Assembly (NCBI RefSeq): GCF_003918875.1
Contig: NW_025767311.1
Span: 248,001 to 312,000, forward strand
Origin: Haliotis rubra
Lineage: Eukaryota
Direction of reading: 5' to 3'
DNA: 64,000 bases
The notes beneath the pieces were generated by a model. It was given only the letters and a program-made list of their open reading frames with translations, made no database searches and had not been told where the DNA came from. The translations under genes were made by a program, and so were the position numbers. Below, piece after piece: positions 16,070 to 59,290 of this stretch (its first letter is position 1; each line of letters begins with the position of its first letter).

Positions 16070-17050
16070 TAGAGTCAGTTATCAGCCATAGTAGAGTCAG
16101 TCATCATCGACACAGAGTCAGTTATCAACCATAGTAGAGTCAGTCATCACCAACACAGAGTCAGTCAGGCATCACCAACACAGAGTCAGTTATCAGCCAT
16201 AGTAGAGTCAGTCATCACCGACACAGAGTCAGTTATCAACCATAGTAGAGTCAGTCATCACCGACACAGAGTCAGTTATCAGCCATAGTAGAGTCAGTCA
16301 TCACCAACACAGAGTCAGTCATCACCAACACAGAGTCAGTCATCACCAACACAGAGTCAGTCATCACCAACACAAAGTCAGTCATCACCAACACAGAGTC
16401 AGTCAGTCATCACCAACACAGAGTCAGTCATCACCAACACAGAGTCAGTCAGTCATCACCAACACAGAGTCAGTTATCAGCCATAGTACAGTCAGTCATC
16501 ACCAACACAGAGTCGGTCATCGAAAAGTACAGAGGCAATCAACATCAACAATAGAGTCGGTCATCGGCAAGTACAGAGTCCGCCATCAGACACAATAGAG
16601 TCGATCATCGAAAAGTACAGAATCGGTCATCAGAAACAAGAGAGTCGGTCATCGGCAAGTACAGAGTCAGTCATCAGAAACAATAGAGTCGGTCATCGGC
16701 AAGTACAGAGTCAGTCATCAGAAACAATAGAGTCGGTCATCGGCAAGTACAGCAGAGTCAGTCATCAGGCATCGGCAGTACAGAATCAGTCATCAGAAAC
16801 AATAGAGTCGGTCATCGGCAAGTACAGAGTCAGTCATCAGAAACAATAGAGTCGGTCATCGGCAGAAAGAGTCAGTCACAGAGTCAGTCATCAGAAACAA
16901 TAGAGTCGGTCATCGGCAAGTACAGAGTCAGTCATCAGAAACAATAGAGTCGGTCATCGGCAAGTACAGAGTCAGTCATCAGAAACAATAGAGTCGGTCA
17001 TCGGCAAGTACAGAATCAGTCATCAGAAACAGTAGAGTCAGTCATCGAAA
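16070..17050. repeat. Compound 21/22-bp minisatellite with a 44-bp dimeric block
   Basis: AGAGTCAGTCATCACCAACAC units, then (AGAGTCGGTCATCGGCAAGTAC AGAGTCAGTCATCAGAAACAAT)n; degenerate flanks span about 15860-17270. Confidence 0.92.
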
Positions 17051-17512
17051 TGTACAGAGGCAATCATATGTATCAACAGAGTCAGTCACCTGCAACAATA
17101 CTCCAGCAGCAGAAACAGTCAGACTGGTTGTCATTCATTACAAACAAATCTATAAAAATACATCAAACAACCATCAATAGAGTCATTCAACAACAGCCAG
17201 TTACTGCAGCAGTAGAGTGTGTAAGCAGCATCAGTAACAACAGATAGTCGGCATCCTAGAGTCGTCCACGTCAGCCAAGACGGCCATCTATAACAGTGAC
17301 AGTAGACAGGACATAGAGTCTGGATCAGCTCCACCCAGACAAGAACCAATTCATATCAAGAATTACAATGGACGTTTTGGTCGCTGATGAAGAAGATCCG
17401 GTGCGGTCCCTTTGTTTCGCAGATGGACATCTCTGCGAGAGAACCCGTGAGCCTGTCAACAGACACACCGGAATATATCAGTCACTGACTCGGGAGGAAA
17501 TGAGTTACCGGA

Positions 17513-17577: not shown

Positions 17578-18384
17578 CATTATTATCTTTCATGATTCGA
17601 AGATCTCCAAAACTATTTTCACCTGAATATCTCTTTCTGTTCTCCTTTAATACACTACAGTATAATTCCTAAGTTCATTTGTGAAGTATTTAGTGTGTAC
17701 TTTGTATCAGGCGATCAGTTGCATATTGGCTGAGAGTTGATACATCACCTGAAACTCGACATAGATCGTGTTTCGGTAAATATGATGAATACACTTGGTG
17801 TTGACGTGATACTGCGTTGAAACAGACGTCATGGGGTTGAAACAATGTTTTCTTTGTGCTGGGGCTTGGCTGATACATAAGTTCATTTTCCTGTGATATT
17901 ATACAAAATGAAATTGGAGTTATTATAAGATAGGAAATGGACTGGGAATCTCAGACAGTGACTGTCGCCTAACAGATAAAGTAATACTCGTTACACTATC
18001 ACCCTGTCTTCTCGTTTCAATGTAAAGTTCCCGGGGTCTATCTGTCTGGTATTTGTTAGTGTTAAATGGTAAGCAACTCGAAAGTTCAGGGGAAATGTAT
18101 TGCTAGCAGACATGAAATTAAACCAAAGAGACAATGAGTTGTATTTCAAGGAAAGTGAAGCCGGATATCTTAGCTGCTGCATCGGTGGTGCAAGTTAATG
18201 TTATAACTACGATATCTGGGAACATCTGCGAAATGATTATACATCATAATCATTGTCAGACAGCTTCATAATTCTCTTATTTGCATCCTTGTCATTAGAC
18301 TCAGCCTACCTACAGGCCCTTCCTTTCGCATGTGTCTTCGTTCCGCCTCTTCACCTATGTCCCTACATTGTGTCTACGGGCCTA

Positions 18385-21362
18385 TCGTGTGTCTCCTTCT
18401 CTCCTCTACACCAGTGTCCCTCTCGTGTGTCTCCTTCCATCCTCCACACTAGTGTCCCTCTCGTGTGTCTCCTTACCCAGTTTCCCTCTCTTGTGTCTCC
18501 TTCCCTCCTCCACGCCAGTGTCCCTCTCGTGTGTATCCTTCCAACCTCCACCCAAGTGTCCCTCTCGTGTGTCTCCTTCCCCACTGTCCCTCTCGTGTGT
18601 CTCCTTCCCCAATGTCACTCTCGTGTGTCTCCTTTCCCCAGTGCCCCTCTCGTGTGTCTCCTTCCTCAGTGTCCCTCTAGTGTGTCTCCTTCCCCAGTGT
18701 CCCTCTCGTGTGTCTCCTTCCCCAATGTCACTCTCGTGTGTCTCCTTTCCCCAGTGTCCCTCTCGTGTGTCTCCTTCCTCAGTGTCCCTCTCGTGTGTTT
18801 CCTTCCCCAATGTCACTCTCGTGTGTCTCCTTTCCCCAGTGTCCCTCTCGTGTGTCTCCTTCCTCAGTGTCCCTCTAGTGTGTCTCCTTCCCCAGTGTCC
18901 CTCTCGTGTGTCTCCTTTCCCCAGTGTCCCTCTCGTGTGTCTCCTTCCACAGTGTCCCTCTCGTGTGTCTCCTTCCCCAGTGTCCCTCTCGTGTGTCTCC
19001 TTTCCCCAGTGTCCCTCTCGTGTGTCTCCTTCGCCAGTGTCCCTTTTGTATGTCTCCTTCCATCCTCCACGCCACGTCCCTCTCGTGTGTCTCCATCTCA
19101 AGTGACCCCTTCTTGTGTCTCCTTCCCTCCTCCATACCAGTGACACTCCAGTGTGTCTCCATCCATCCTCAACACCAGTGTCCCTCTCGTGTGTCTCCTT
19201 CCCCAGTGTCCCTCTCGTGTGTCTCCTTCCCCAGTGTCTCAATAGTGTATCTCCTTCCCCCTTCAAACCAGTGTCACTCTCTTGTGTCTCCTTCCTCAGT
19301 GTCCCTCTCGTGTGTTTCCTTCCCCAGTGTCCCTCCAGTGTGTCTCCTTCACTCCTCCACACCAGTGTCCCTCTCGTGTGTCTCCTTCCCCAGTGTCCCT
19401 CTCGTGTGTCTCCTTCTCAGTGTCCCTCAGTGTCCTCTCGTGTCTCTCCTTCACCAGTGTCCTCTCTCATGTGTCCTTCCTTGTTCCTTTCATGTGTCTT
19501 CCTTCCTTATCCTCCACGCCAGCGTCCCTCTCGTGTGTCTCCTTCCCCATGTCCCTCTCTGTGTGTCTCCTTCCCCAGTGTCCCTCTAGTGTGTCTCCTT
19601 CCCTCATTCACCAGGGTCCCACTCTCTTGTGTCTCCTTCCTCCTCCTCCACACCAGGGTCCCTCTCGTGTGTCTCCTTCCCCCCAGTGTTCCCTTCTTCT
19701 TGTGTGTCCCTCTCTGTGTGTCATCCTCCATACCAGTGTCCCTTCTCTGTCTGTCCTCCCCTCCTTCCCCTGTGTCCCTCTCGTGTGTCTCCTTCCCCAG
19801 TGTCCCTCCTCCATTCTTCCTCCGTGTCCCTCTCGTGTCCCTCTCTGTGTCCTCCTCCAGTGTCCCTCTCGTGTGTGTCTCCTTCCTCCATACCAGTGTC
19901 CCTCTCGTGTGTCTCCTTCCCCAGTGTCCCTCTCGTGTGTCTTCTTCCTCCGTGTCCCTCTCGTGTGTCTCCTTCCCTCCTCCGTACCAGTGTCCCTCTC
20001 GTGTGTCTCCTTCCATCCTCCATACCAGTGTCCTTCTCGTGTATGTCCTTCCCCAGTGTCCCTTTCGTGTGTCTCCTTGCCCAGTGTCCCTCTCGTTTGT
20101 CTCCTTACCCAGTGTCCCTCTCGTGTATGTCCTTCTCCAGTGTCCCTCTCGTGTGTCTCCTTCCCTCCTCAATACCAGTGTCCCTCTCGTGTGTCTCCTT
20201 CCCCAGGGTCCCACACGTATGTTTCCTTGCCCAGTGTCCTCAGTGTGTCTCCTCAGTGTCTCTATCGTGTGTCTCCTTCCATCCTCCATACCAGTGTCCG
20301 TCTCGTGTGTCTCCTTCCTCCTCCTCCATACCAGTGTCCCTCTCGTGTGTCTCCTCTTCCCTCCTCCACACCAGTGTCCCTGTGTCCTCCTTCCCTCCTG
20401 TGTCCCTCCTTGTGTCTCCTCCCTCCACACACCAGTGTCCCTCTCGTGTGTCTCCTTCCCTCCTCACACCAGTGTCCCTCTCGTGTGTCTCCTTCCCTCC
20501 TACACACCAGTGTCCCTCTCGTGTGTGTCCTTCCTCCTCCATCAGTGTCCCTCTCGTGTGTCTCCTTCCCTCCTCCCCACTCCATACCAGTGTCCGTCTC
20601 CTGTGTGTGTCTCCTTCCATCCTCCATACCAGTGTCCGTCTCTGTGTCTCCTCCCCTCCCATCCCATACCAGTGTCCGTCTCGTGTGTGTCTCCTTCTCT
20701 CCTCCATACCAGTGTCCCTTCTCGTCTCGTGTGTCTCCTTCCCTCCTCCACACCAGTGTCCCTCTCGTGTGTCTCCTTCCCTCCCCCACACCAGTGTCCC
20801 TCTCGTGTGTCTCCTTCCCTCCTACACACCAGTGTCCCTCTCTGTGTGTCTCCTTCCCTCCTCCACACCAGTGTCCCTCTCCCTCTCGTGTGTCTCCTTC
20901 CATCCTCCCATACCAGTGTCTCCTTCTATCCTCCATACCCAGTGTCAGTGTCCCTCCTCCTCCACACCAGTGTCCCTCTCTGTGTCTCCTTCATCCTCCA
21001 TACCAGTGTCCGTCTCGTGTGTCTCCTTCTATCCTCCATACCAGTGTCCGTCTCGTGTGTCTCCTTCCCTCCTCCATACCAGTGTCCCTCTCGTGTGTCT
21101 CCTTCTATCCTCCATACCAGTGTCCGTCTCGTGTGTCTCCTTCCCATCCTCCATACCAGTGTCCCTTTCGTGTGTCTCCTTCCCTCCTCCACACCAGTGT
21201 CCCTCTCGTGTGTCTCCTTCTCTCCTCCACACCAGTGTCCCTCTCGTGTGTCTCCTATCATCCATACCAGTGTCCCTCTCCTGTGTCTCCTTCTATCACC
21301 CATACCAGTGTTCCTCTCGTGTGTCTCCTTCCCTCCTCCACGCCAGTGTCCCTCTTGTGTGT
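18385..21362. repeat. 3-kb pyrimidine-rich minisatellite (core CCAGTGTCCCTCTCGTGTGTCTCCTTCC; about 29-41-bp units)
   Basis: Tandem core throughout; the scarcity of A on the + strand explains the 580-794-aa stop-free ORFs. Confidence 0.95.
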
Positions 21363-22555: not shown

Positions 22556-23329
22556 TTTGACTAATTTGACTGTCTATTTAGGCGTGTGTTTATTTCATAG
22601 GCAGGTTATACCAGCATATATTTAGCAGCACAGCAAAGGATCCATGGAGCGTAACAGTGAACTGGGATTACGATATCTTTAAAGTGAAAACTATCCCGCG
22701 ATAAGTTGTAAACTGACATCTATGAGATGCGACCTTGTCAAGGAAATAGGTGTTTATATCATGACACCACCGGATCAATCTCTCCTCATCTGCGGGCGGT
22801 TCTTCGTGTGTTCAGAGCACTCCTTTGTCATGAGCTCTTTTGAAGAACAAAAGAAGCTATTTATGAGATTCAAACACAAAACTGTGTGATGTGAACATTT
22901 ATTGATGGGAATTGCGGGTTAAGTGTGACTGCCTATCTCAGCCGAACCGCTGATGTATTGACATGTCATACTGAGTCAAACACTGCTTCATGCGACGGTG
23001 ATGCTGAAGCTGGAATCGTGAAGAAGATGTAACGTGACTACAACAACTCTCCGACATCACAGTTCGAACGCATGAAACGGCAACAGTGGCAGCAGTGGCG
23101 TAGATATGTATATATCACATGTACAGATATACCACTCACAGGGATAAATCTGGCAGTTTCAAGTGCATGGAAGTTGCGTACATCTTCAAAGAAAATATGA
23201 TTCATGACTCTTGGCGCTGTTTTTCACAGTTCGTTTATACAACCTCATGGGCGGATCCAGGAATTTTGAAGGGGGGGGGGGGGGGGGGGGGGGTCTAGAG
23301 AGTGAGTGCATTGTGCGAGATATTCAGCT

Positions 23330-24030
23330 GAGGATGACTGGTGCATTGTGGGAGGTACTGTCTTGGAATGACTGGTGCATTGAGGGAGGTACTGCCTGGG
23401 GATCACTGACACATTGTGGGAGGTACTGCCTTAGAATGACTGGTGCATTGAGGGAGGTACTGCCTGGGGATCACTGACACGTTGTGGGAGATACTGTCTT
23501 GGAATGACTGGTGCATTGAGGGAGGTACTGCCTGGGGATCACTGATACATTGTGGGAGGAACTGTCTTGGAATGACTGGTGCATTGAGGGAGGTACTGCC
23601 TGGGGATCACTGATACATTGTGGGAGGTACTGTCTTGGAATGACTGGTGCATTGAGGGAGGTACTGCCTGGGGATCACTGATACATTGTGGGAGGTACTG
23701 TCTTGGAATGACTGGTGCATTGAGGGAGGTACTGCCTGGGAATCACTGATACATTGTGGGAGGTACTGTCTTGGAATGACTGGTGCATTGAGTGAGGTAC
23801 TGCCTGGGGATCACTGATACATTGTGGGAGGTACTGTCTTGGAATGACTGGTGCATTGAGGGAGGTACTGCCTGGGAATCACTGATACATTGTGGGAGGT
23901 ACTGTCTTGGAATGACTGGTGCACTGAGTGAGGTACTGCCTGGGGATCACTGATACATTGTGGGAGGTACTGTCTTGGAATGACTGGTGCATTGAGGGAG
24001 GTACTGCCTGGGGAGGGGGGGTACTGTCTG
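23330..24030. repeat. 68-bp minisatellite (dimer of two diverged 34-bp subunits)
   Basis: TGTCTTGGAATGACTGGTGCATTGAGGGAGGTAC alternates with TGCCTGGGGATCACTGATACATTGTGGGAGGTAC. Preceded by a poly-G run (23271-23293) and a GGCGGATCCAGGAATTTT MITE-like end. Confidence 0.93.
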
Positions 24031-38799: not shown

Positions 38800-39232
38800 G
38801 CTTGGTTTGGTTGGTTGTTTTACGCCGCACTCAGCAATATCCCAGCAATATGGCGGCGGTCAGTAAATAATTGAGTCTGAACCAGACAATACAGTGATCA
38901 GAATCATGTGCATCGATCTGGGTTGGAACAAGTATATATGGATGACAACTTCTTTTCTTCTAGAGCATGACGTTCCGATACAGGTTCTTGTATCGTTTTC
39001 AAGTATGAATGGTACAAGGTTGAGGCGAAATTAACAATGTGATGATAACGAATAAAGGGATAACAGAGGATTACAGACATAAACATAGAGCCAGGTGGAA
39101 GCCAGTGATACACAGAGCGCAGTATGTAGCATGTATACCAGTCTGCCAGTCTGACCACCCGATCCCGTTAGTCACCTCTTACGACAAGCATGGGTTACTG
39201 AAGACCAATTCTAACCCAGATCTTCACGGGTC
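38800..39232 (-). mobile_element. SINE-like family B with an internal insertion of about 190 bp
   Basis: 5' GACCCGTGAAGATCTGGGTTAGAATTGGTCTTCAG at 39232; TSD GTGTGC(G/T)TTAG at 38789-99 and 39233-43. Confidence 0.85.
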
Positions 39233-41564: not shown

Positions 41565-42162
41565 ATTAATAAGAGCAAGGCTATTTAACTTATAAATGGT
41601 GCATTATTTCAAAAGATGACTGCTGATACAAATTCTATGATATTGTTCATGTTACTGTTAATTTCGATGGTGCCATTATTAATGAAGGTGTTGTTTTGAT
41701 TGTTTGAATTTTTGTGTAGGCAAATTCTGAGTGAACCTATGAACTTTGACCCAGGGGTTGTGTAAACAGAGGGTAGATGTTCTGAAAGTTTCAATTTGTT
41801 GATTTGTGAATGTTTATAAAAACCGGCTCGTCGGAGGACGGGGAATGGATATTTCTTATTTCGTAATACTGCTGAAACAAATACATACTCATGATATTGT
41901 CACAATTGTACAGTCGCCACTGCTTATAGCAGAGATTTGTTATGGTTATGGAATAGGTTTTGTCGCTTCTATTAGACCCTTGGGGACACGCCCATTGAAG
42001 TGGAGATCATCTATGCTGGGGTATCTGTATGGATGCTTTGGTTAAGGCTTTTAGTGTAAGAAAGATGACTTGTACTCTTCTGCCACAGTTGTCATAATCA
42101 TAATCACATTTTTGCATTTTCCAGAGATCTTCCTTAAGCGGCATTTAGAAGCTGGTATGATG

Positions 42163-42321
42163 AAGTGGAACACTTTTTATGGATAGACAACTTCTTTGTT
42201 GCCAGTAGTAGTTGCGACGTTTCGTAGATCCTAACACCGTTATCAAGCAAATGATCTACACCGAAACGTCGCAACTACTACTGCAGCAAAGAAGTTGTCT
42301 ATCCATAAAAGCGTTCCACTT
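42163..42321. mobile_element. Palindromic mini-element made of two inverted Penelope-type pLTR segments
   Basis: About 68-bp near-perfect inverted arms ending GAAACGTCGCAACTACTACTG...AAAGAAGTTGTCTATCCATAAAA. Confidence 0.75.
42211..42251 (-). ncRNA. Minimal type I hammerhead ribozyme motif (PLE-type, U3-A8 variant; helix II damaged)
   Basis: UUGC-UUGAUAA-C-GGUGU-UAGGAUCU-AC-GAAAC-GUC-GCAA. Helix I is UUGC/GCAA, the core boxes are present and GUC is the cleavage triplet. The missing ACC of helix II is preserved in the opposite arm (42253-42275). Confidence 0.65.
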
Positions 42322-42642
42322 TTCAGAGACGGCATTTACTTATTAAGTGTGCCATTTATTGGTGAAGTGGAAACTGTGGAATCCGAAGAGAGACAAATGC
42401 GTTGGCTAGATGGAAGTGCGTTATGTTTCAGGCATATTTTCTGTTATTGATGGGGAGGGGAGAATTGATTGGTTAGGACCGATTGTGGCGATGTCTTTGC
42501 GATATTCAAGGGGATTAGATTAACAACTACAATTATGTGTCGTCGTCGTCGTTGTTGTTGTTGGCGTTGTCATGCTGCCTAGATGCAGGTACAGAAAATG
42601 CTGAAATGGTGAGAGGATAGGAGGACCCCATACCTACCGAAT

Positions 42643-42808
42643 AGAGAGGGAGTGAGTTTAGTTTTGCGCCGCTTTTAGCAATATTCCAGCAATATCACGG
42701 CGGGGAACACCAGAAATAATCTTCACAGATTGTACCCATGTGAGGAATCGAACCCGGGTCTTCGGCGTGACGAGCGAACGCTTTAACCACTATGTTACCC
42801 CACCGCCC
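42643..42808 (-). mobile_element. SINE family A
   Basis: Full-length; TSD ACCGAAT at 42636-42 and 42809-15. Confidence 0.92.
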
Positions 42809-45859: not shown

Positions 45860-46650
45860 TGCCTTGCATCAAAGTTAATTCGTGTACAGAACGGAACGTG
45901 ACTTAAGGTTGACATCTTGCAACTGCAAATGCGCGGGGAGCATTCATTGAGCTCCATAAAATCGCGATAAACGAGTGGGTTATAATTTTGAAAAGTACAC
46001 ATACCAGATATGAACAAACTTCGTTGACGATACAAGATTCTGTATCGAACCATCGCATCACCTGAATACAGAAGTCGTTCATCCATAAAGTTAGTCCTTA
46101 TCTGACTCTCCAACTTTTATAAATGCCAATCAAAGAATTTACACATACCAACCAAATGATTGGAACTGACCCGTTATAAACTTAAGTGTTCTACTTCTGA
46201 ACATTGAACAAAATACACAGATGTAATACGTTTATAAAGCGTCTGTGCATTCTGAAAATATTCGAAACACTAATGTTCTCAACCAAGAGGATGTTACACT
46301 TTTAGAACGTCTGTAGAGTATTTCAGGCTGAGGTACTGAAGAATGTAACGCCTCCGAACAAATGCTTTTCCAATGCTGAAATGACAAATCTTCGTGCGGA
46401 CGAAATATATTTTGGAAATTTTGCAAATCACCTCAAGGTTCTTCAAGGCGTAAAGATTCTCTTATATAGAACCACTCAGGCAAATTTTGAACTGTAATCA
46501 TGAAATATATGGATATTCAAGTAACTTAATTATGTGAGTCAGCGCTCATCATAAAACAGTGCAAACCCGCGTGTAGCATTGTTAAGCAGGCGATCCACAC
46601 TCAGCCTGAGATGTTACCAATTAACCTGGGTAAATCACCCCATGAACGAC
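45860..46650 (-). mobile_element. Decayed Penelope-like RT relic
   Basis: Collinear degraded motifs GVIY.Q (about 46640), FQNIFRPHEDL (FRYIDD position), KFFDWHL (FLD position) and IRTNFMDER (TxLYDKR position). Confidence 0.4.
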
Positions 46651-47071: not shown

Positions 47072-47202
47072 GAAACTTCTATGGATATACAACTTCTTTT
47101 TGATAACCGAAGTTTAGGCGAAGCTGCTTACGCCGTTATCACTCGTTTGACAGAAACGTCGGTTACATTAATATAACGAAGTTGTGTATCCGTAGAACTT
47201 TC
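47072..47202. mobile_element. Second palindromic PLE-type mini-element with decayed hammerhead motif
   Basis: Inverted arms TCTATGGATATACAACTTC / GAAGTTGTGTATCCGTAGA; minus strand reads GTGATAACGGCG...CGCCTAAACTTCGGT and plus strand GAAACGTCGGT. Confidence 0.6.
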
Positions 47203-58896: not shown

Positions 58897-59290
58897 CATT
58901 TGTTTATGTCTATTTAACCATACACTTGTTTATGTCTATTTAACCATTACTCATTCCTACATTCGTTTATGTCTATTTAACCATTACTCATTCCTACATT
59001 CGTTTATGTCTATTTAACCATTACTCATTCCTACATTCGTTTATGTCTAGGGGCGGCGGGGGTAGCCTAATGGTTAAAGCGTTGGCTCGTCACGCCGAAG
59101 ACCCGGGTTCGAATCCCCACATGGGCACAATGTGTGAAGCCCATTTCTGGTGTCCCCCGCCGTGATGTTGCTGGAATATTGCTAAAAGCGGCGTAAAACC
59201 AAACTCAGTCAGTCAGTCAGTTTATGTCTATTTAACCATTACTCATTCCTGCATTTGTTTATGTCTATTTAACCATTACTCATTCCTGCA
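58897..59290. repeat. 37-bp tandem repeat interrupted by a SINE
   Basis: TTTAACCATTACTCATTCCTACATTCGTTTATGTCTA units on both sides of the SINE. Confidence 0.9.
59050..59219 (+). mobile_element. SINE family A
   Basis: A and B boxes intact, (TCAG)n tail, TSD GTTTATGTCTA at 59039-49 and 59220-30. Confidence 0.93.

What the first reader, a model, noticed from the sequence alone, without database searches (positions are those of the whole stretch)
42163..42321. Palindromic Penelope-derived mini-element carrying a minimal hammerhead ribozyme with a U3-A8 core
Seen: a 159-bp inverted repeat whose minus strand reads UUGC UUGAUAA C GGUGU UAGGAUCU AC GAAAC GUC GCAA, while the other arm keeps the intact ...CUACACCGAAACGUCGCAA half. 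The two-arm consensus gives helix I (UUGC/GCAA), helix II (GGUGU/ACACC), a UUGAUAA box in place of CUGANGA (compensatory U3-A8) and a loopless GAAACGUC helix III. Established: Penelope-like element pLTRs encode minimal type I hammerheads with a rudimentary helix III, thought to work as dimers. Inference: this is a non-autonomous head-to-head pLTR mini-retroelement that looks like a MITE but is ribozyme-bearing, and it would give a long dsRNA hairpin if transcribed.
Basis: partly seen in the sequence, partly recalled or inferred. Interest (0 to 1): 0.72.

Follow-up and report, generated by a model that had tools for sequence, protein, structure and literature searches.

The report
Broken two-armed Penelope retroelement insertion
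The inverted repeat is a short, dead, two-armed insertion of the tail end of a Penelope-like jumping gene of an abalone, and it carries two broken copies of a small hammerhead-type RNA motif already published for such elements, so it is a good example of a known thing.

Summary
The inverted repeat is real. It is the core of a 193-bp insert (window 42129-42321) flanked by an imperfect ~9-bp target-site duplication.

Both arms are the last 70-130 nt of the 3' end of an abalone Penelope-like element (PLE). In longer copies this end follows an ORF that ends in a GIY-YIG endonuclease.

The layout matches the published PLE insertion signature: two 5'-truncated copies head to head, complete outer ends, a 32-nt "tail" on one end only, and target-site duplications (TSDs) of 9-14 bp.

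Intact copies carry a 42-nt motif that meets every descriptor feature of the published minimal PLE hammerhead of the U3-A8 type. Across nine PLE lineages helix II covaries (95.6% paired, 4 of 5 pairs with double changes). Across six well-kept lineages N7 is the only 5'-box position that varies.

In the window both copies are broken: one lost 3 nt of helix II, the other lacks its 5' half.

I found no support for a self-propagating palindromic "mini-element". Inner junctions differ between copies and fit de novo formation at each insertion.

Cleavage remains untested. This scan reached the same reading on other DNA of this genome. Verdict: a new member of a known kind, low interest.

The parts
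42119..42127 (.). Left copy of the target-site duplication (TTCCAGAGA).
   Evidence: Read. It is repeated with a one-base difference at 42322-42329. Other copies of the family have different flanking duplications of about 9-14 bp.
42129..42255 (-). Long arm. On the minus strand it is the PLE 3' end, positions 46-174 of the natural reference copy L034:1504-1677. It is 5'-truncated just upstream of the hammerhead motif.
   Evidence: Local alignment to the reference: 129 of 130 aligned bases identical, plus a 3-nt deletion. Family alignment.
42129..42160 (-). 32-nt "tail" (reference 143-174), present on this arm only. It explains why the insert is asymmetric.
   Evidence: Single-arm copies L033, L032 and L057 end with the same 32 nt. 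A 30-40-bp tail at one end of PLE insertions is described in PMC8557442.
42212..42250 (-). Minimal hammerhead relic (U3-A8 type). Helix I, both core boxes and the GUC site are present, but 3 nt of the 3' strand of helix II are deleted (near 42224/42225).
   Evidence: Covariance-model hit at 52.7 bits with three unpaired helix II positions. The hammerhead fold is lost: MFE -4.0 kcal/mol, z = +1.19, against -11.3 for the intact copy, whose centroid is the hammerhead fold.
42253..42321 (+). Short arm. It is the PLE 3' end, reference positions 71-140, with no tail.
   Evidence: 67 of 69 aligned bases identical. It starts inside loop 2 of the motif.
42253..42274 (+). 3' half of the hammerhead motif only: end of loop 2, 3' strand of helix II, GAAAC, GUC, and the 3' strand of helix I. 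The 5' core box is absent.
   Evidence: The descriptor scan finds no complete motif on this strand.
42253..42255 (.). The junction of the two arms, a 3-nt microhomology (GAT) shared by both.
   Evidence: Read against the reference coordinates.
42322..42329 (.). Right copy of the target-site duplication (TTCAGAGA).
   Evidence: Read.

Best explanation
Window 42129-42321 is one dead-on-arrival retro-insertion of a canonical Penelope-like element (PLE: reverse transcriptase followed by a C-terminal GIY-YIG endonuclease) in an abalone genome.

It consists of two extremely 5'-truncated copies of the element's 3' end joined head to head:
- a 127-bp arm on the minus strand that carries the 32-nt tail;
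- a 69-bp arm on the plus strand.
The arms are joined at a 3-nt microhomology, and the whole is flanked by a ~9-bp target-site duplication.

Inferred mechanism: staggered nicking by the endonuclease, then reverse transcription primed at the target from the 3' end of the element's RNA on both sides. The two short cDNAs are then joined by a template switch.

The copied 3' end contains the family's 42-nt minimal type I hammerhead motif of the U3-A8 kind, which sits about 50 nt before the element's end. Here one copy has lost 3 nt of helix II and the other lacks its 5' half, so the locus encodes no working ribozyme. If transcribed through, it would form a roughly 75-bp hairpin.
For: Family and insertion scars:
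- The genome holds many copies: 2071 first-look candidates. There are 296 copies of the 42-nt motif within 2 mismatches, against 0 for the reversed control.
- Copies have different flanks and TSDs of about 9-14 bp.

Link to a PLE:
- Longer copies run upstream into an ORF whose end carries a GIY-YIG motif. Pfam GIY-YIG scores E = 0.034 at residues 99-149.
- The protein atlas places it in eukaryotic GIY-YIG/HTH_animal clusters at 0.97.
- Haliotis homologues are 45-66% identical. P0003 passes the Pfam GIY-YIG cut-off (25.0 against 22.6 bits), and P0001 begins with the end of RVT_1 (E = 5e-4).
- Relatives in the genome have open frames of up to 886 aa.

PLE insertion signature:
- 5' truncation at many points.
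- 8 of 30 loci, chosen only for holding reference positions 1-67, have an inverted 5'-truncated arm (45-194 nt) next to the direct copy.
- The outer ends are always the element's 3' end, and the 32-nt tail is usually on one end only. All these traits are described in PMC8557442.

Motif:
- It meets every feature of the min-HHR descriptor of PMC4209133. My descriptor scan found 39 hits in 303 kb, all from this family, and 0 in shuffled sequence.
- Across nine PLE lineages helix II is 95.6% paired, 4 of 5 pairs have changes on both sides, and the covariation score beat 500 of 500 shuffles.
- In the six well-kept lineages the six specified positions of the 5' core box, and G12 to A15.1, are invariant, while N7 is U, C or A.
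- The centroid fold of the intact motif is the hammerhead fold.
Against: - The position of the motif in a pLTR, as opposed to simply the 3' end, is therefore not shown. RT linkage rests on a 66%-identical homologue with a sub-threshold RVT_1 match.
- The ORF fragment itself is below the Pfam GIY-YIG cut-off.
- No Rfam hammerhead family matches, even at E <= 10. This is expected for a motif without helix III and with U3-A8, but it is no support either.
- Helix I is weak across lineages: 58% of cells paired.
- The extra base before helix II is always C or U and could pair with G12. ViennaRNA draws a 6-bp hairpin.
- Self-cleavage is untested. The published relatives cleave poorly in vitro.
- Some inner junctions recur among copies, which the de novo model explains only by a hot spot.
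Confidence: 0.85

Rival explanations
1. The palindrome is a non-autonomous mini-retroelement family that is transcribed and retrotransposed as a fold-back unit by PLE enzymes.
For: - Many fold-back copies of similar size (about 190-210 bp) have distinct TSDs.
- Several junction types recur, for example reference 46 joined to 65 in four loci and 45 joined to 56 in three.
- A read-through transcript ending at the element's 3' end would carry the sequence that the RT presumably recognises.
Against: - At least 10 different junctions occur among 21 copies.
- The size similarity is largely a selection effect of searching with the window's own palindrome. The sample not chosen that way shows inverted arms of 45-194 nt beside direct copies of 142-520 nt.
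- The arms are 97-100% identical to the young single-arm copies, with no fold-back-specific substitutions.
- Both outer ends are always complete, as expected if each is a primed 3' end.
Confidence: 0.1
2. The conserved 42-nt stretch is not a ribozyme. It would be a hairpin signal of the PLE 3' UTR, for example for RT binding or RNA stability, that merely resembles a degenerate hammerhead.
For: - Only helix II is clearly supported by covariation, and helix I is weak.
- The base before helix II can pair with G12 to give a plain 6-bp hairpin.
- A second block downstream of the motif is also conserved between lineages.
- Published min-HHRs cleave poorly in vitro.
- Naiad PLEs thrive without hammerheads.
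Against: - The unpaired core is conserved in the hammerhead-specific pattern: all specified core positions are invariant in six lineages and N7 is free.
- G10.1-C11.1 is kept in 8 of 9 lineages.
- The site triplet is GUC, AUU or GCC, always ending in an allowed H.
- The U3-A8 pair is the known isosteric replacement of C3-G8 reported for PLEs.
- Many ~40-nt tandem arrays end their unit right after the predicted cleavage site.
Confidence: 0.2
3. A cut-and-paste MITE with terminal inverted repeats, moved by a DNA transposase.
For: It has a long inverted repeat, a short length and flanking duplications. Weak Rfam matches to MITE-derived miRNA hairpins (MIR8007 at 51 bits, mir-548 at 46 bits) are far below the gathering scores.
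Against: - TSD length varies from about 9 to 14 bp.
- The insert is asymmetric, with a 32-nt tail on one side.
- Hundreds of single-arm copies exist.
- The arms are colinear with the 3' UTR of a GIY-YIG ORF.
- The Rfam hits only reflect a long hairpin.
Confidence: 0.02

Closest known systems
Minimal hammerhead ribozymes of metazoan Penelope-like elements, U3-A8 variant (Cervera and De la Pena 2014, PMC4209133)
   Same: - Type I layout with no helix III loop (ACGU palindrome at 15.1-16.1).
- A UUGANAA box in place of CUGANGA.
- One extra base between A9 and G10.1, and a G10.1-C11.1 pair.
- A short helix I of 4 bp.
- Located near the end of a PLE.
- Mostly found as solitary motifs of truncated copies, sometimes as pairs on opposite strands 100-700 bp apart.
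   Different: - The host is an abalone; the main text of the paper names no mollusc.
- Helix II is 5 bp (6 if the extra C pairs with G12), against 6-8 bp in the paper.
- The two motifs here are only about 40 bp apart, and both are damaged.
Complex tandem/inverted PLE insertions with a one-sided 30-40-bp tail (Craig et al. 2021, PMC8557442)
   Same: Heavy 5' truncation, an inverted 5'-truncated copy abutting the direct copy, and a 32-nt tail at one end.
   Different: The window's copy is at the extreme short end of this range. There is no ORF and no pLTR, only two terminal stubs, so it mimics a MITE.
L1 twin priming (Ostertag and Kazazian 2001; from my own knowledge)
   Same: The second nick also primes reverse transcription, giving an inverted, 5'-truncated structure with TSDs.
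   Different: In twin priming the inverted segment is an internal part of the same RNA. Here both arms include the 3' end itself, so each priming event started at a 3' end.
Non-LTR retrozymes of animals (PMC7229834; bioRxiv 10.64898/2026.07.22.740005)
   Same: They are hammerhead-bearing non-coding sequences related to PLE terminal repeats.
   Different: Retrozymes are head-to-tail repeats of 170-400 bp that give circular RNAs. This locus is a head-to-head pair of stubs with no intact ribozyme.

Membership tests
PLE minimal hammerhead (min-HHR, U3-A8 variant) | Core boxes: U3-U4-G5-A6-N7-A8-A9, and G12-A13-A14 followed by A15.1. | tested here: met
   Both boxes are present on the window's minus strand and in intact family copies. 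They are invariant in six lineages except N7, which is U, C or A.
PLE minimal hammerhead (min-HHR, U3-A8 variant) | Helix II closed by G10.1-C11.1, with one extra base between A9 and G10.1. | tested here: met
   In the family, helix II is 5 bp plus an extra C or U. G-C is kept in 8 of 9 lineages, and 4 of 5 pairs covary. In the window copy itself this is not met, because 3 nt of the 3' strand are deleted.
PLE minimal hammerhead (min-HHR, U3-A8 variant) | No helix III loop, palindromic 15.2-16.2, and a cleavage triplet ending in H. | tested here: met
   A-C-G-U followed by C17 in the window and in the family. Decayed lineages show CpG-type changes at this position.
PLE minimal hammerhead (min-HHR, U3-A8 variant) | A short helix I (4-5 bp) flanking the motif. 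| tested here: inconclusive
   This family has 4 bp (UUGC/GCAA). Across nine lineages only 58% of cells pair, and only the two inner pairs are kept.
PLE minimal hammerhead (min-HHR, U3-A8 variant) | Self-cleavage after H17, as a dimer. | not testable with these tools
   Only assembled contigs of public runs were on hand, with no raw RNA reads. There is no wet assay.
Endonuclease-positive Penelope-like element (C-terminal GIY-YIG) | An ORF with a reverse transcriptase followed by a GIY-YIG endonuclease. | tested here: inconclusive
   GIY-YIG: the ORF tail itself scores E = 0.034, the homologue P0003 scores above the Pfam cut-off, and P0001 starts with the end of RVT_1 at E = 5e-4. No full-length copy of this family was fetched.
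Endonuclease-positive Penelope-like element (C-terminal GIY-YIG) | Insertion scars: variable TSD, 5' truncation, an adjacent inverted 5'-truncated copy, and a 30-40-bp tail at one end. | tested here: met
   compared with the description in PMC8557442.
Endonuclease-positive Penelope-like element (C-terminal GIY-YIG) | The hammerhead lies in a pseudo-LTR, a terminal repeat formed by a partial tandem. | not tested
   Only 3' parts of up to 923 bp were in hand.
MITE (non-autonomous DNA transposon) | Terminal inverted repeats at both ends, a TSD of fixed length, and termini shared with a transposase-bearing element. | tested here: not met
   The insert has asymmetric ends, TSDs of 9-14 bp, single-arm copies, and continuity with a GIY-YIG ORF.
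Rfam hammerhead families (RF00163, RF00008, RF02275-7) | A score at or above the gathering threshold. | tested here: not met
   No hammerhead hit in the window at gathering, nor in 41900-42600 at E <= 10. The whole-genome RF00163 search was uninformative because its controls did not ring.

The most novel reading that the evidence does not exclude
The PLE end may hold its own promoter just upstream of the hammerhead, and the hammerhead may cut in vivo.

Two boundaries recur in independent data:
1. One arm of most fold-back junctions starts at reference 45-52, a few bases 5' of helix I. This holds for 10 of 12 strand-switch joints in contigs of a public DNA run and for most copies.
2. Many tandem arrays of ~40-nt units run from that same point to exactly the base after which a hammerhead would cut, joining GUC or a variant directly to A[C/U]UUGC.

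A TATATAT box lies about 30 nt upstream of a TCATTT initiator-like word at that boundary (reference 16-22 and 47-52).

Together these could be footprints of a ~40-nt RNA running from the transcription start to the cleavage site, which the telomerase-related PLE RT copies repeatedly or snaps back on.
Probability: 0.2. Interest if true: 0.65.

Novelty: new member of a known kind. Interest (0 to 1): 0.27.

Why it matters
For annotation, short palindromes of this kind in mollusc genomes should be labelled as two-armed PLE stubs, not as MITEs or miRNA-like hairpins. The locus has no likely function of its own.

The family behind it is more useful. It gives a clean, covariation-supported natural example of the U3-A8 minimal hammerhead outside flatworms, with hundreds of young copies. 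Its junction and array boundaries offer a way to ask whether these weak ribozymes really cut in vivo.

Tried and rejected
Searches that gave nothing usable:
- Rfam at gathering score and at E <= 10 gave no hammerhead. It gave only sub-threshold matches to hairpin miRNA families, which reflect the long stem.
- The whole-genome RF00163 search returned nothing, and its controls did not ring either, so it says nothing.
- Pfam on the ORF tails at E <= 0.01 was blank. GIY-YIG appeared only at E = 0.034.

Reads:
- All listed public runs are kept as contigs, none on record as RNA. Transcription, strand and RNA ends could not be read.

Tandem arrays:
- A first pattern for tandem junctions found only 5 places.

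Scripts and folding:
- The automatic TSD finder was unreliable because the element's last bases overlap the duplications. TSDs were therefore read by eye.
- Cofolding two motifs gave a domain-swapped dimer, not the hammerhead dimer, and was not used.

Context and limits:
- There are no ORFs of note around the insert, so it lies in non-coding DNA.
I did not try to get round that.

Full report
**Observation.** The flagged inverted repeat exists. The repeat finder reports three abutting arm pairs between 42163 and 42321 at 93-100% complementarity. As RNA, 42128-42321 folds into one long hairpin of -104.5 kcal/mol, against -39.5 +/- 4.4 for shuffles (z = -14.9).

**It is a repeat family of a 1.38-Gb abalone genome.** A search of the window's own assembly gave 2071 first-look candidates and 83 scored matches. 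Protein homologues are all from Haliotis species.

Aligning 21 other copies with their flanks shows three things:
- The insert really starts at 42129, 34 nt left of the flagged start.
- The extra 32 nt (42129-42160) have no partner on the right.
- Each copy is flanked by its own direct repeat of about 9-14 bp. In the window this is TTCCAGAGA (42119-42127) and TTCAGAGA (42322-42329).

Variable-length duplications point to staggered nicking plus target-primed reverse transcription, not to a DDE transposase. That step rests on established knowledge.

**What the arms are.** Some matches were single arms at 96-97% identity. Reading them gave a natural single-arm copy, L034:1504-1677 (174 nt), which I used as the coordinate reference. 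On this reference:
- the motif occupies positions 51-92;
- the predicted cleavage site follows position 88;
- most arms end at 142;
- the tail is 143-174.

A search with the part upstream of the motif found at least 380 candidates, many 99-100% identical. These copies start at many different points, which is 5' truncation. The longest in hand (about 920 bp) run into an ORF whose end reads as a GIY-YIG motif.

Evidence that this ORF is a PLE ORF:
- Pfam gives GIY-YIG only at E = 0.034 for this fragment.
- The protein atlas places it among eukaryotic GIY-YIG/HTH_animal clusters at 0.97.
- The word search returned 22 Haliotis proteins, 45-66% identical. P0003 passes the Pfam GIY-YIG cut-off, and P0001 begins with the end of RVT_1 at E = 5e-4.
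- Relatives in the genome have open frames of up to 886 aa.

The order RT, linker, C-terminal GIY-YIG is that of canonical endonuclease-positive PLEs (PMC8557442). RT linkage and the pLTR arrangement are therefore inferred, not shown.

**Why it is two-armed.** Craig et al. describe PLE insertions as heavily 5'-truncated. They often carry an inverted 5'-truncated copy abutting the direct copy, and a 30-40-bp tail at one end only. All three traits are seen here.
- In 30 loci chosen only for containing reference positions 1-67, eight have an inverted arm of 45-194 nt. Its outer end is the element's 3' end, and it lies next to a direct copy of 142-520 nt.
- In the 21 short fold-backs the outer ends are always at about 142 or 174. 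The inner ends differ, with at least 10 junction types.
- In the window the minus-strand arm is reference 46-174 (129 of 130 aligned bases identical, plus a 3-nt deletion). The plus-strand arm is reference 71-140 (67 of 69). They share a GAT microhomology at 42253-42255.
- The arms carry no substitutions that set fold-backs apart from single-arm copies.

The simplest reading is that each fold-back formed during its own integration, and that the window's copy sits at the short end of a continuum. The apparent uniform size of the first 21 copies is largely a selection effect of searching with the window's own palindrome.

**The motif.** Cervera and De la Pena (PMC4209133) defined minimal hammerheads of metazoan PLEs by these features:
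- no helix III loop, and so a dimeric mode of action;
- a long helix II and a short helix I;
- an extra base between positions 9 and 10.1;
- a conserved G10.1-C11.1 pair;
- palindromic 15.2-16.2.

They also reported a U3-A8 core variant with about 1,300 hits in Schistosoma, and motif pairs on opposite strands. The intact family motif (L034:1554-1595) has every one of these features.

A descriptor I wrote from that description found 39 hits in the 303 kb in hand, all from this family, and none in shuffled sequence. This is not an unbiased sample, because the loci were chosen for the family.

By chance the loci and the window also held motifs from other PLE lineages.
- In an alignment of six well-kept lineages, the six specified positions of the 5' box and G12-A15.1 are invariant. 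N7 is U, C or A, and the extra base is C or U.
- With nine lineages, helix II is 95.6% paired, and four of its five pairs change on both sides. An example is GGUGU/ACACC becoming GAUAC/GUAUC.
- The covariation score exceeded all 500 shuffles and all slid controls.
- Helix I is weak (58% paired).
- The centroid fold of the intact motif is the hammerhead secondary structure.

The motif is therefore a conserved, structured RNA element with the hammerhead-specific conservation pattern. Catalysis remains untested, and the published relatives cleave poorly in vitro. Rfam has no model that fits it.

**State of the window's copies.**
- The minus-strand copy (42212-42250) lacks 3 nt of the 3' strand of helix II. 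It no longer folds as a hammerhead.
- The plus-strand arm starts in loop 2, so it lacks the 5' box.
- A transcript of the palindrome holds one sense and one antisense copy, which would pair with each other. The head-to-head layout therefore does not provide the tandem dimer that the published model needs.
- No ORF of note lies around the insert.

**Beyond the finding.** Whole-genome counts of 24-mers (one mismatch allowed) were as follows.

| Reference positions | Count |
|---|---|
| 21-44 | 116 |
| 33-56 | 106 |
| 47-70 | 1662 |
| 95-118 | 350 |

Part of the excess over positions 47-70 comes from tandem arrays with units of 37-51 nt that consist of little more than the motif. In many arrays the unit ends right after the predicted cleavage triplet and restarts 2-5 nt before helix I.

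Contigs of a public DNA run laid on an intact copy show the same two boundaries. Ten of 12 strand-switch joints have one side at reference 45-52.

A TATATAT word lies about 30 nt upstream of a TCATTT word at that boundary. This could mean a transcription start just 5' of the hammerhead and cleavage in vivo. However, many of the arrays may share one origin, and other PLE lineages that share only the motif confound the depth figures. I rate this reading at about 0.2.

**Earlier notes of this scan.** On other DNA of the same genome, s1-329446, s1-320423 and s1-320410 reached the same reading of the motif and of fold-back stubs. s1-325293 described a 53-nt array. I used these as leads and tested the claims myself.

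**Verdict.** The Penelope and minimal-hammerhead reading is supported. The "mini-retroelement" reading is not. This is a new member of a known kind, of low interest in itself.

Noticed in passing
window 38959-39010 (-), 46017-46064 (+), 47109-47141 (-): Three further decayed relics of the same kind of motif, from other PLE lineages. Helix II is changed in a compensatory way (GAUAC/GUAUC twice, GGCGU/.CGCC once). They score 37.7, 16.9 and 17.6 bits with my model.
   Followed up: partly
genome places outside the window, e.g. G000:C779:566474-575087, C59:105061-105536, C359:160229-160689, C369:577386-577791, C683:74411-74878, C1069:15904-16397: Tandem arrays of 37-51-nt units that are little more than the minimal hammerhead motif. 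The pattern matched 222 junctions. In many arrays the unit ends directly after the predicted cleavage triplet and restarts 2-5 nt before helix I, so helix I has no 3' strand. The 24-mer of the motif's 5' half occurs 1662 times, against 350 for the downstream part.
   Followed up: partly
L057:1545-1552 (reference 45-52 of the PLE 3' end): A recurrent inner boundary of fold-back arms just 5' of helix I. It appears in 10 of 12 strand-switch joints in contigs of a DNA run and in most copies. TATATAT lies at reference 16-22 and TCATTT at 47-52, which may be a core promoter. This is not tested.
   Followed up: partly
window 42640-42808: Another dispersed repeat, about 160 bp. Copies at 80-91% identity lie within 1-2 kb of the PLE stubs in several other loci (L010, L019, L022, L023, L027). 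Its family was not identified.
   Followed up: no
window 16071-17095, 18381-21362, 23328-24000: Three minisatellites: units of 22/44 nt; C/T-rich units of 28/38 nt, which explain the GC and skew anomaly at 18-22 kb; and a 68-nt unit at 95% matches that runs to the edge of the stretch scanned.
   Followed up: no
window 59056-59127 (+): The only Rfam hit at gathering score in the window is a tRNA at 31.2 bits, just above the cut-off of 29. It may be a tRNA-derived SINE head of the kind noted elsewhere in this genome.
   Followed up: no
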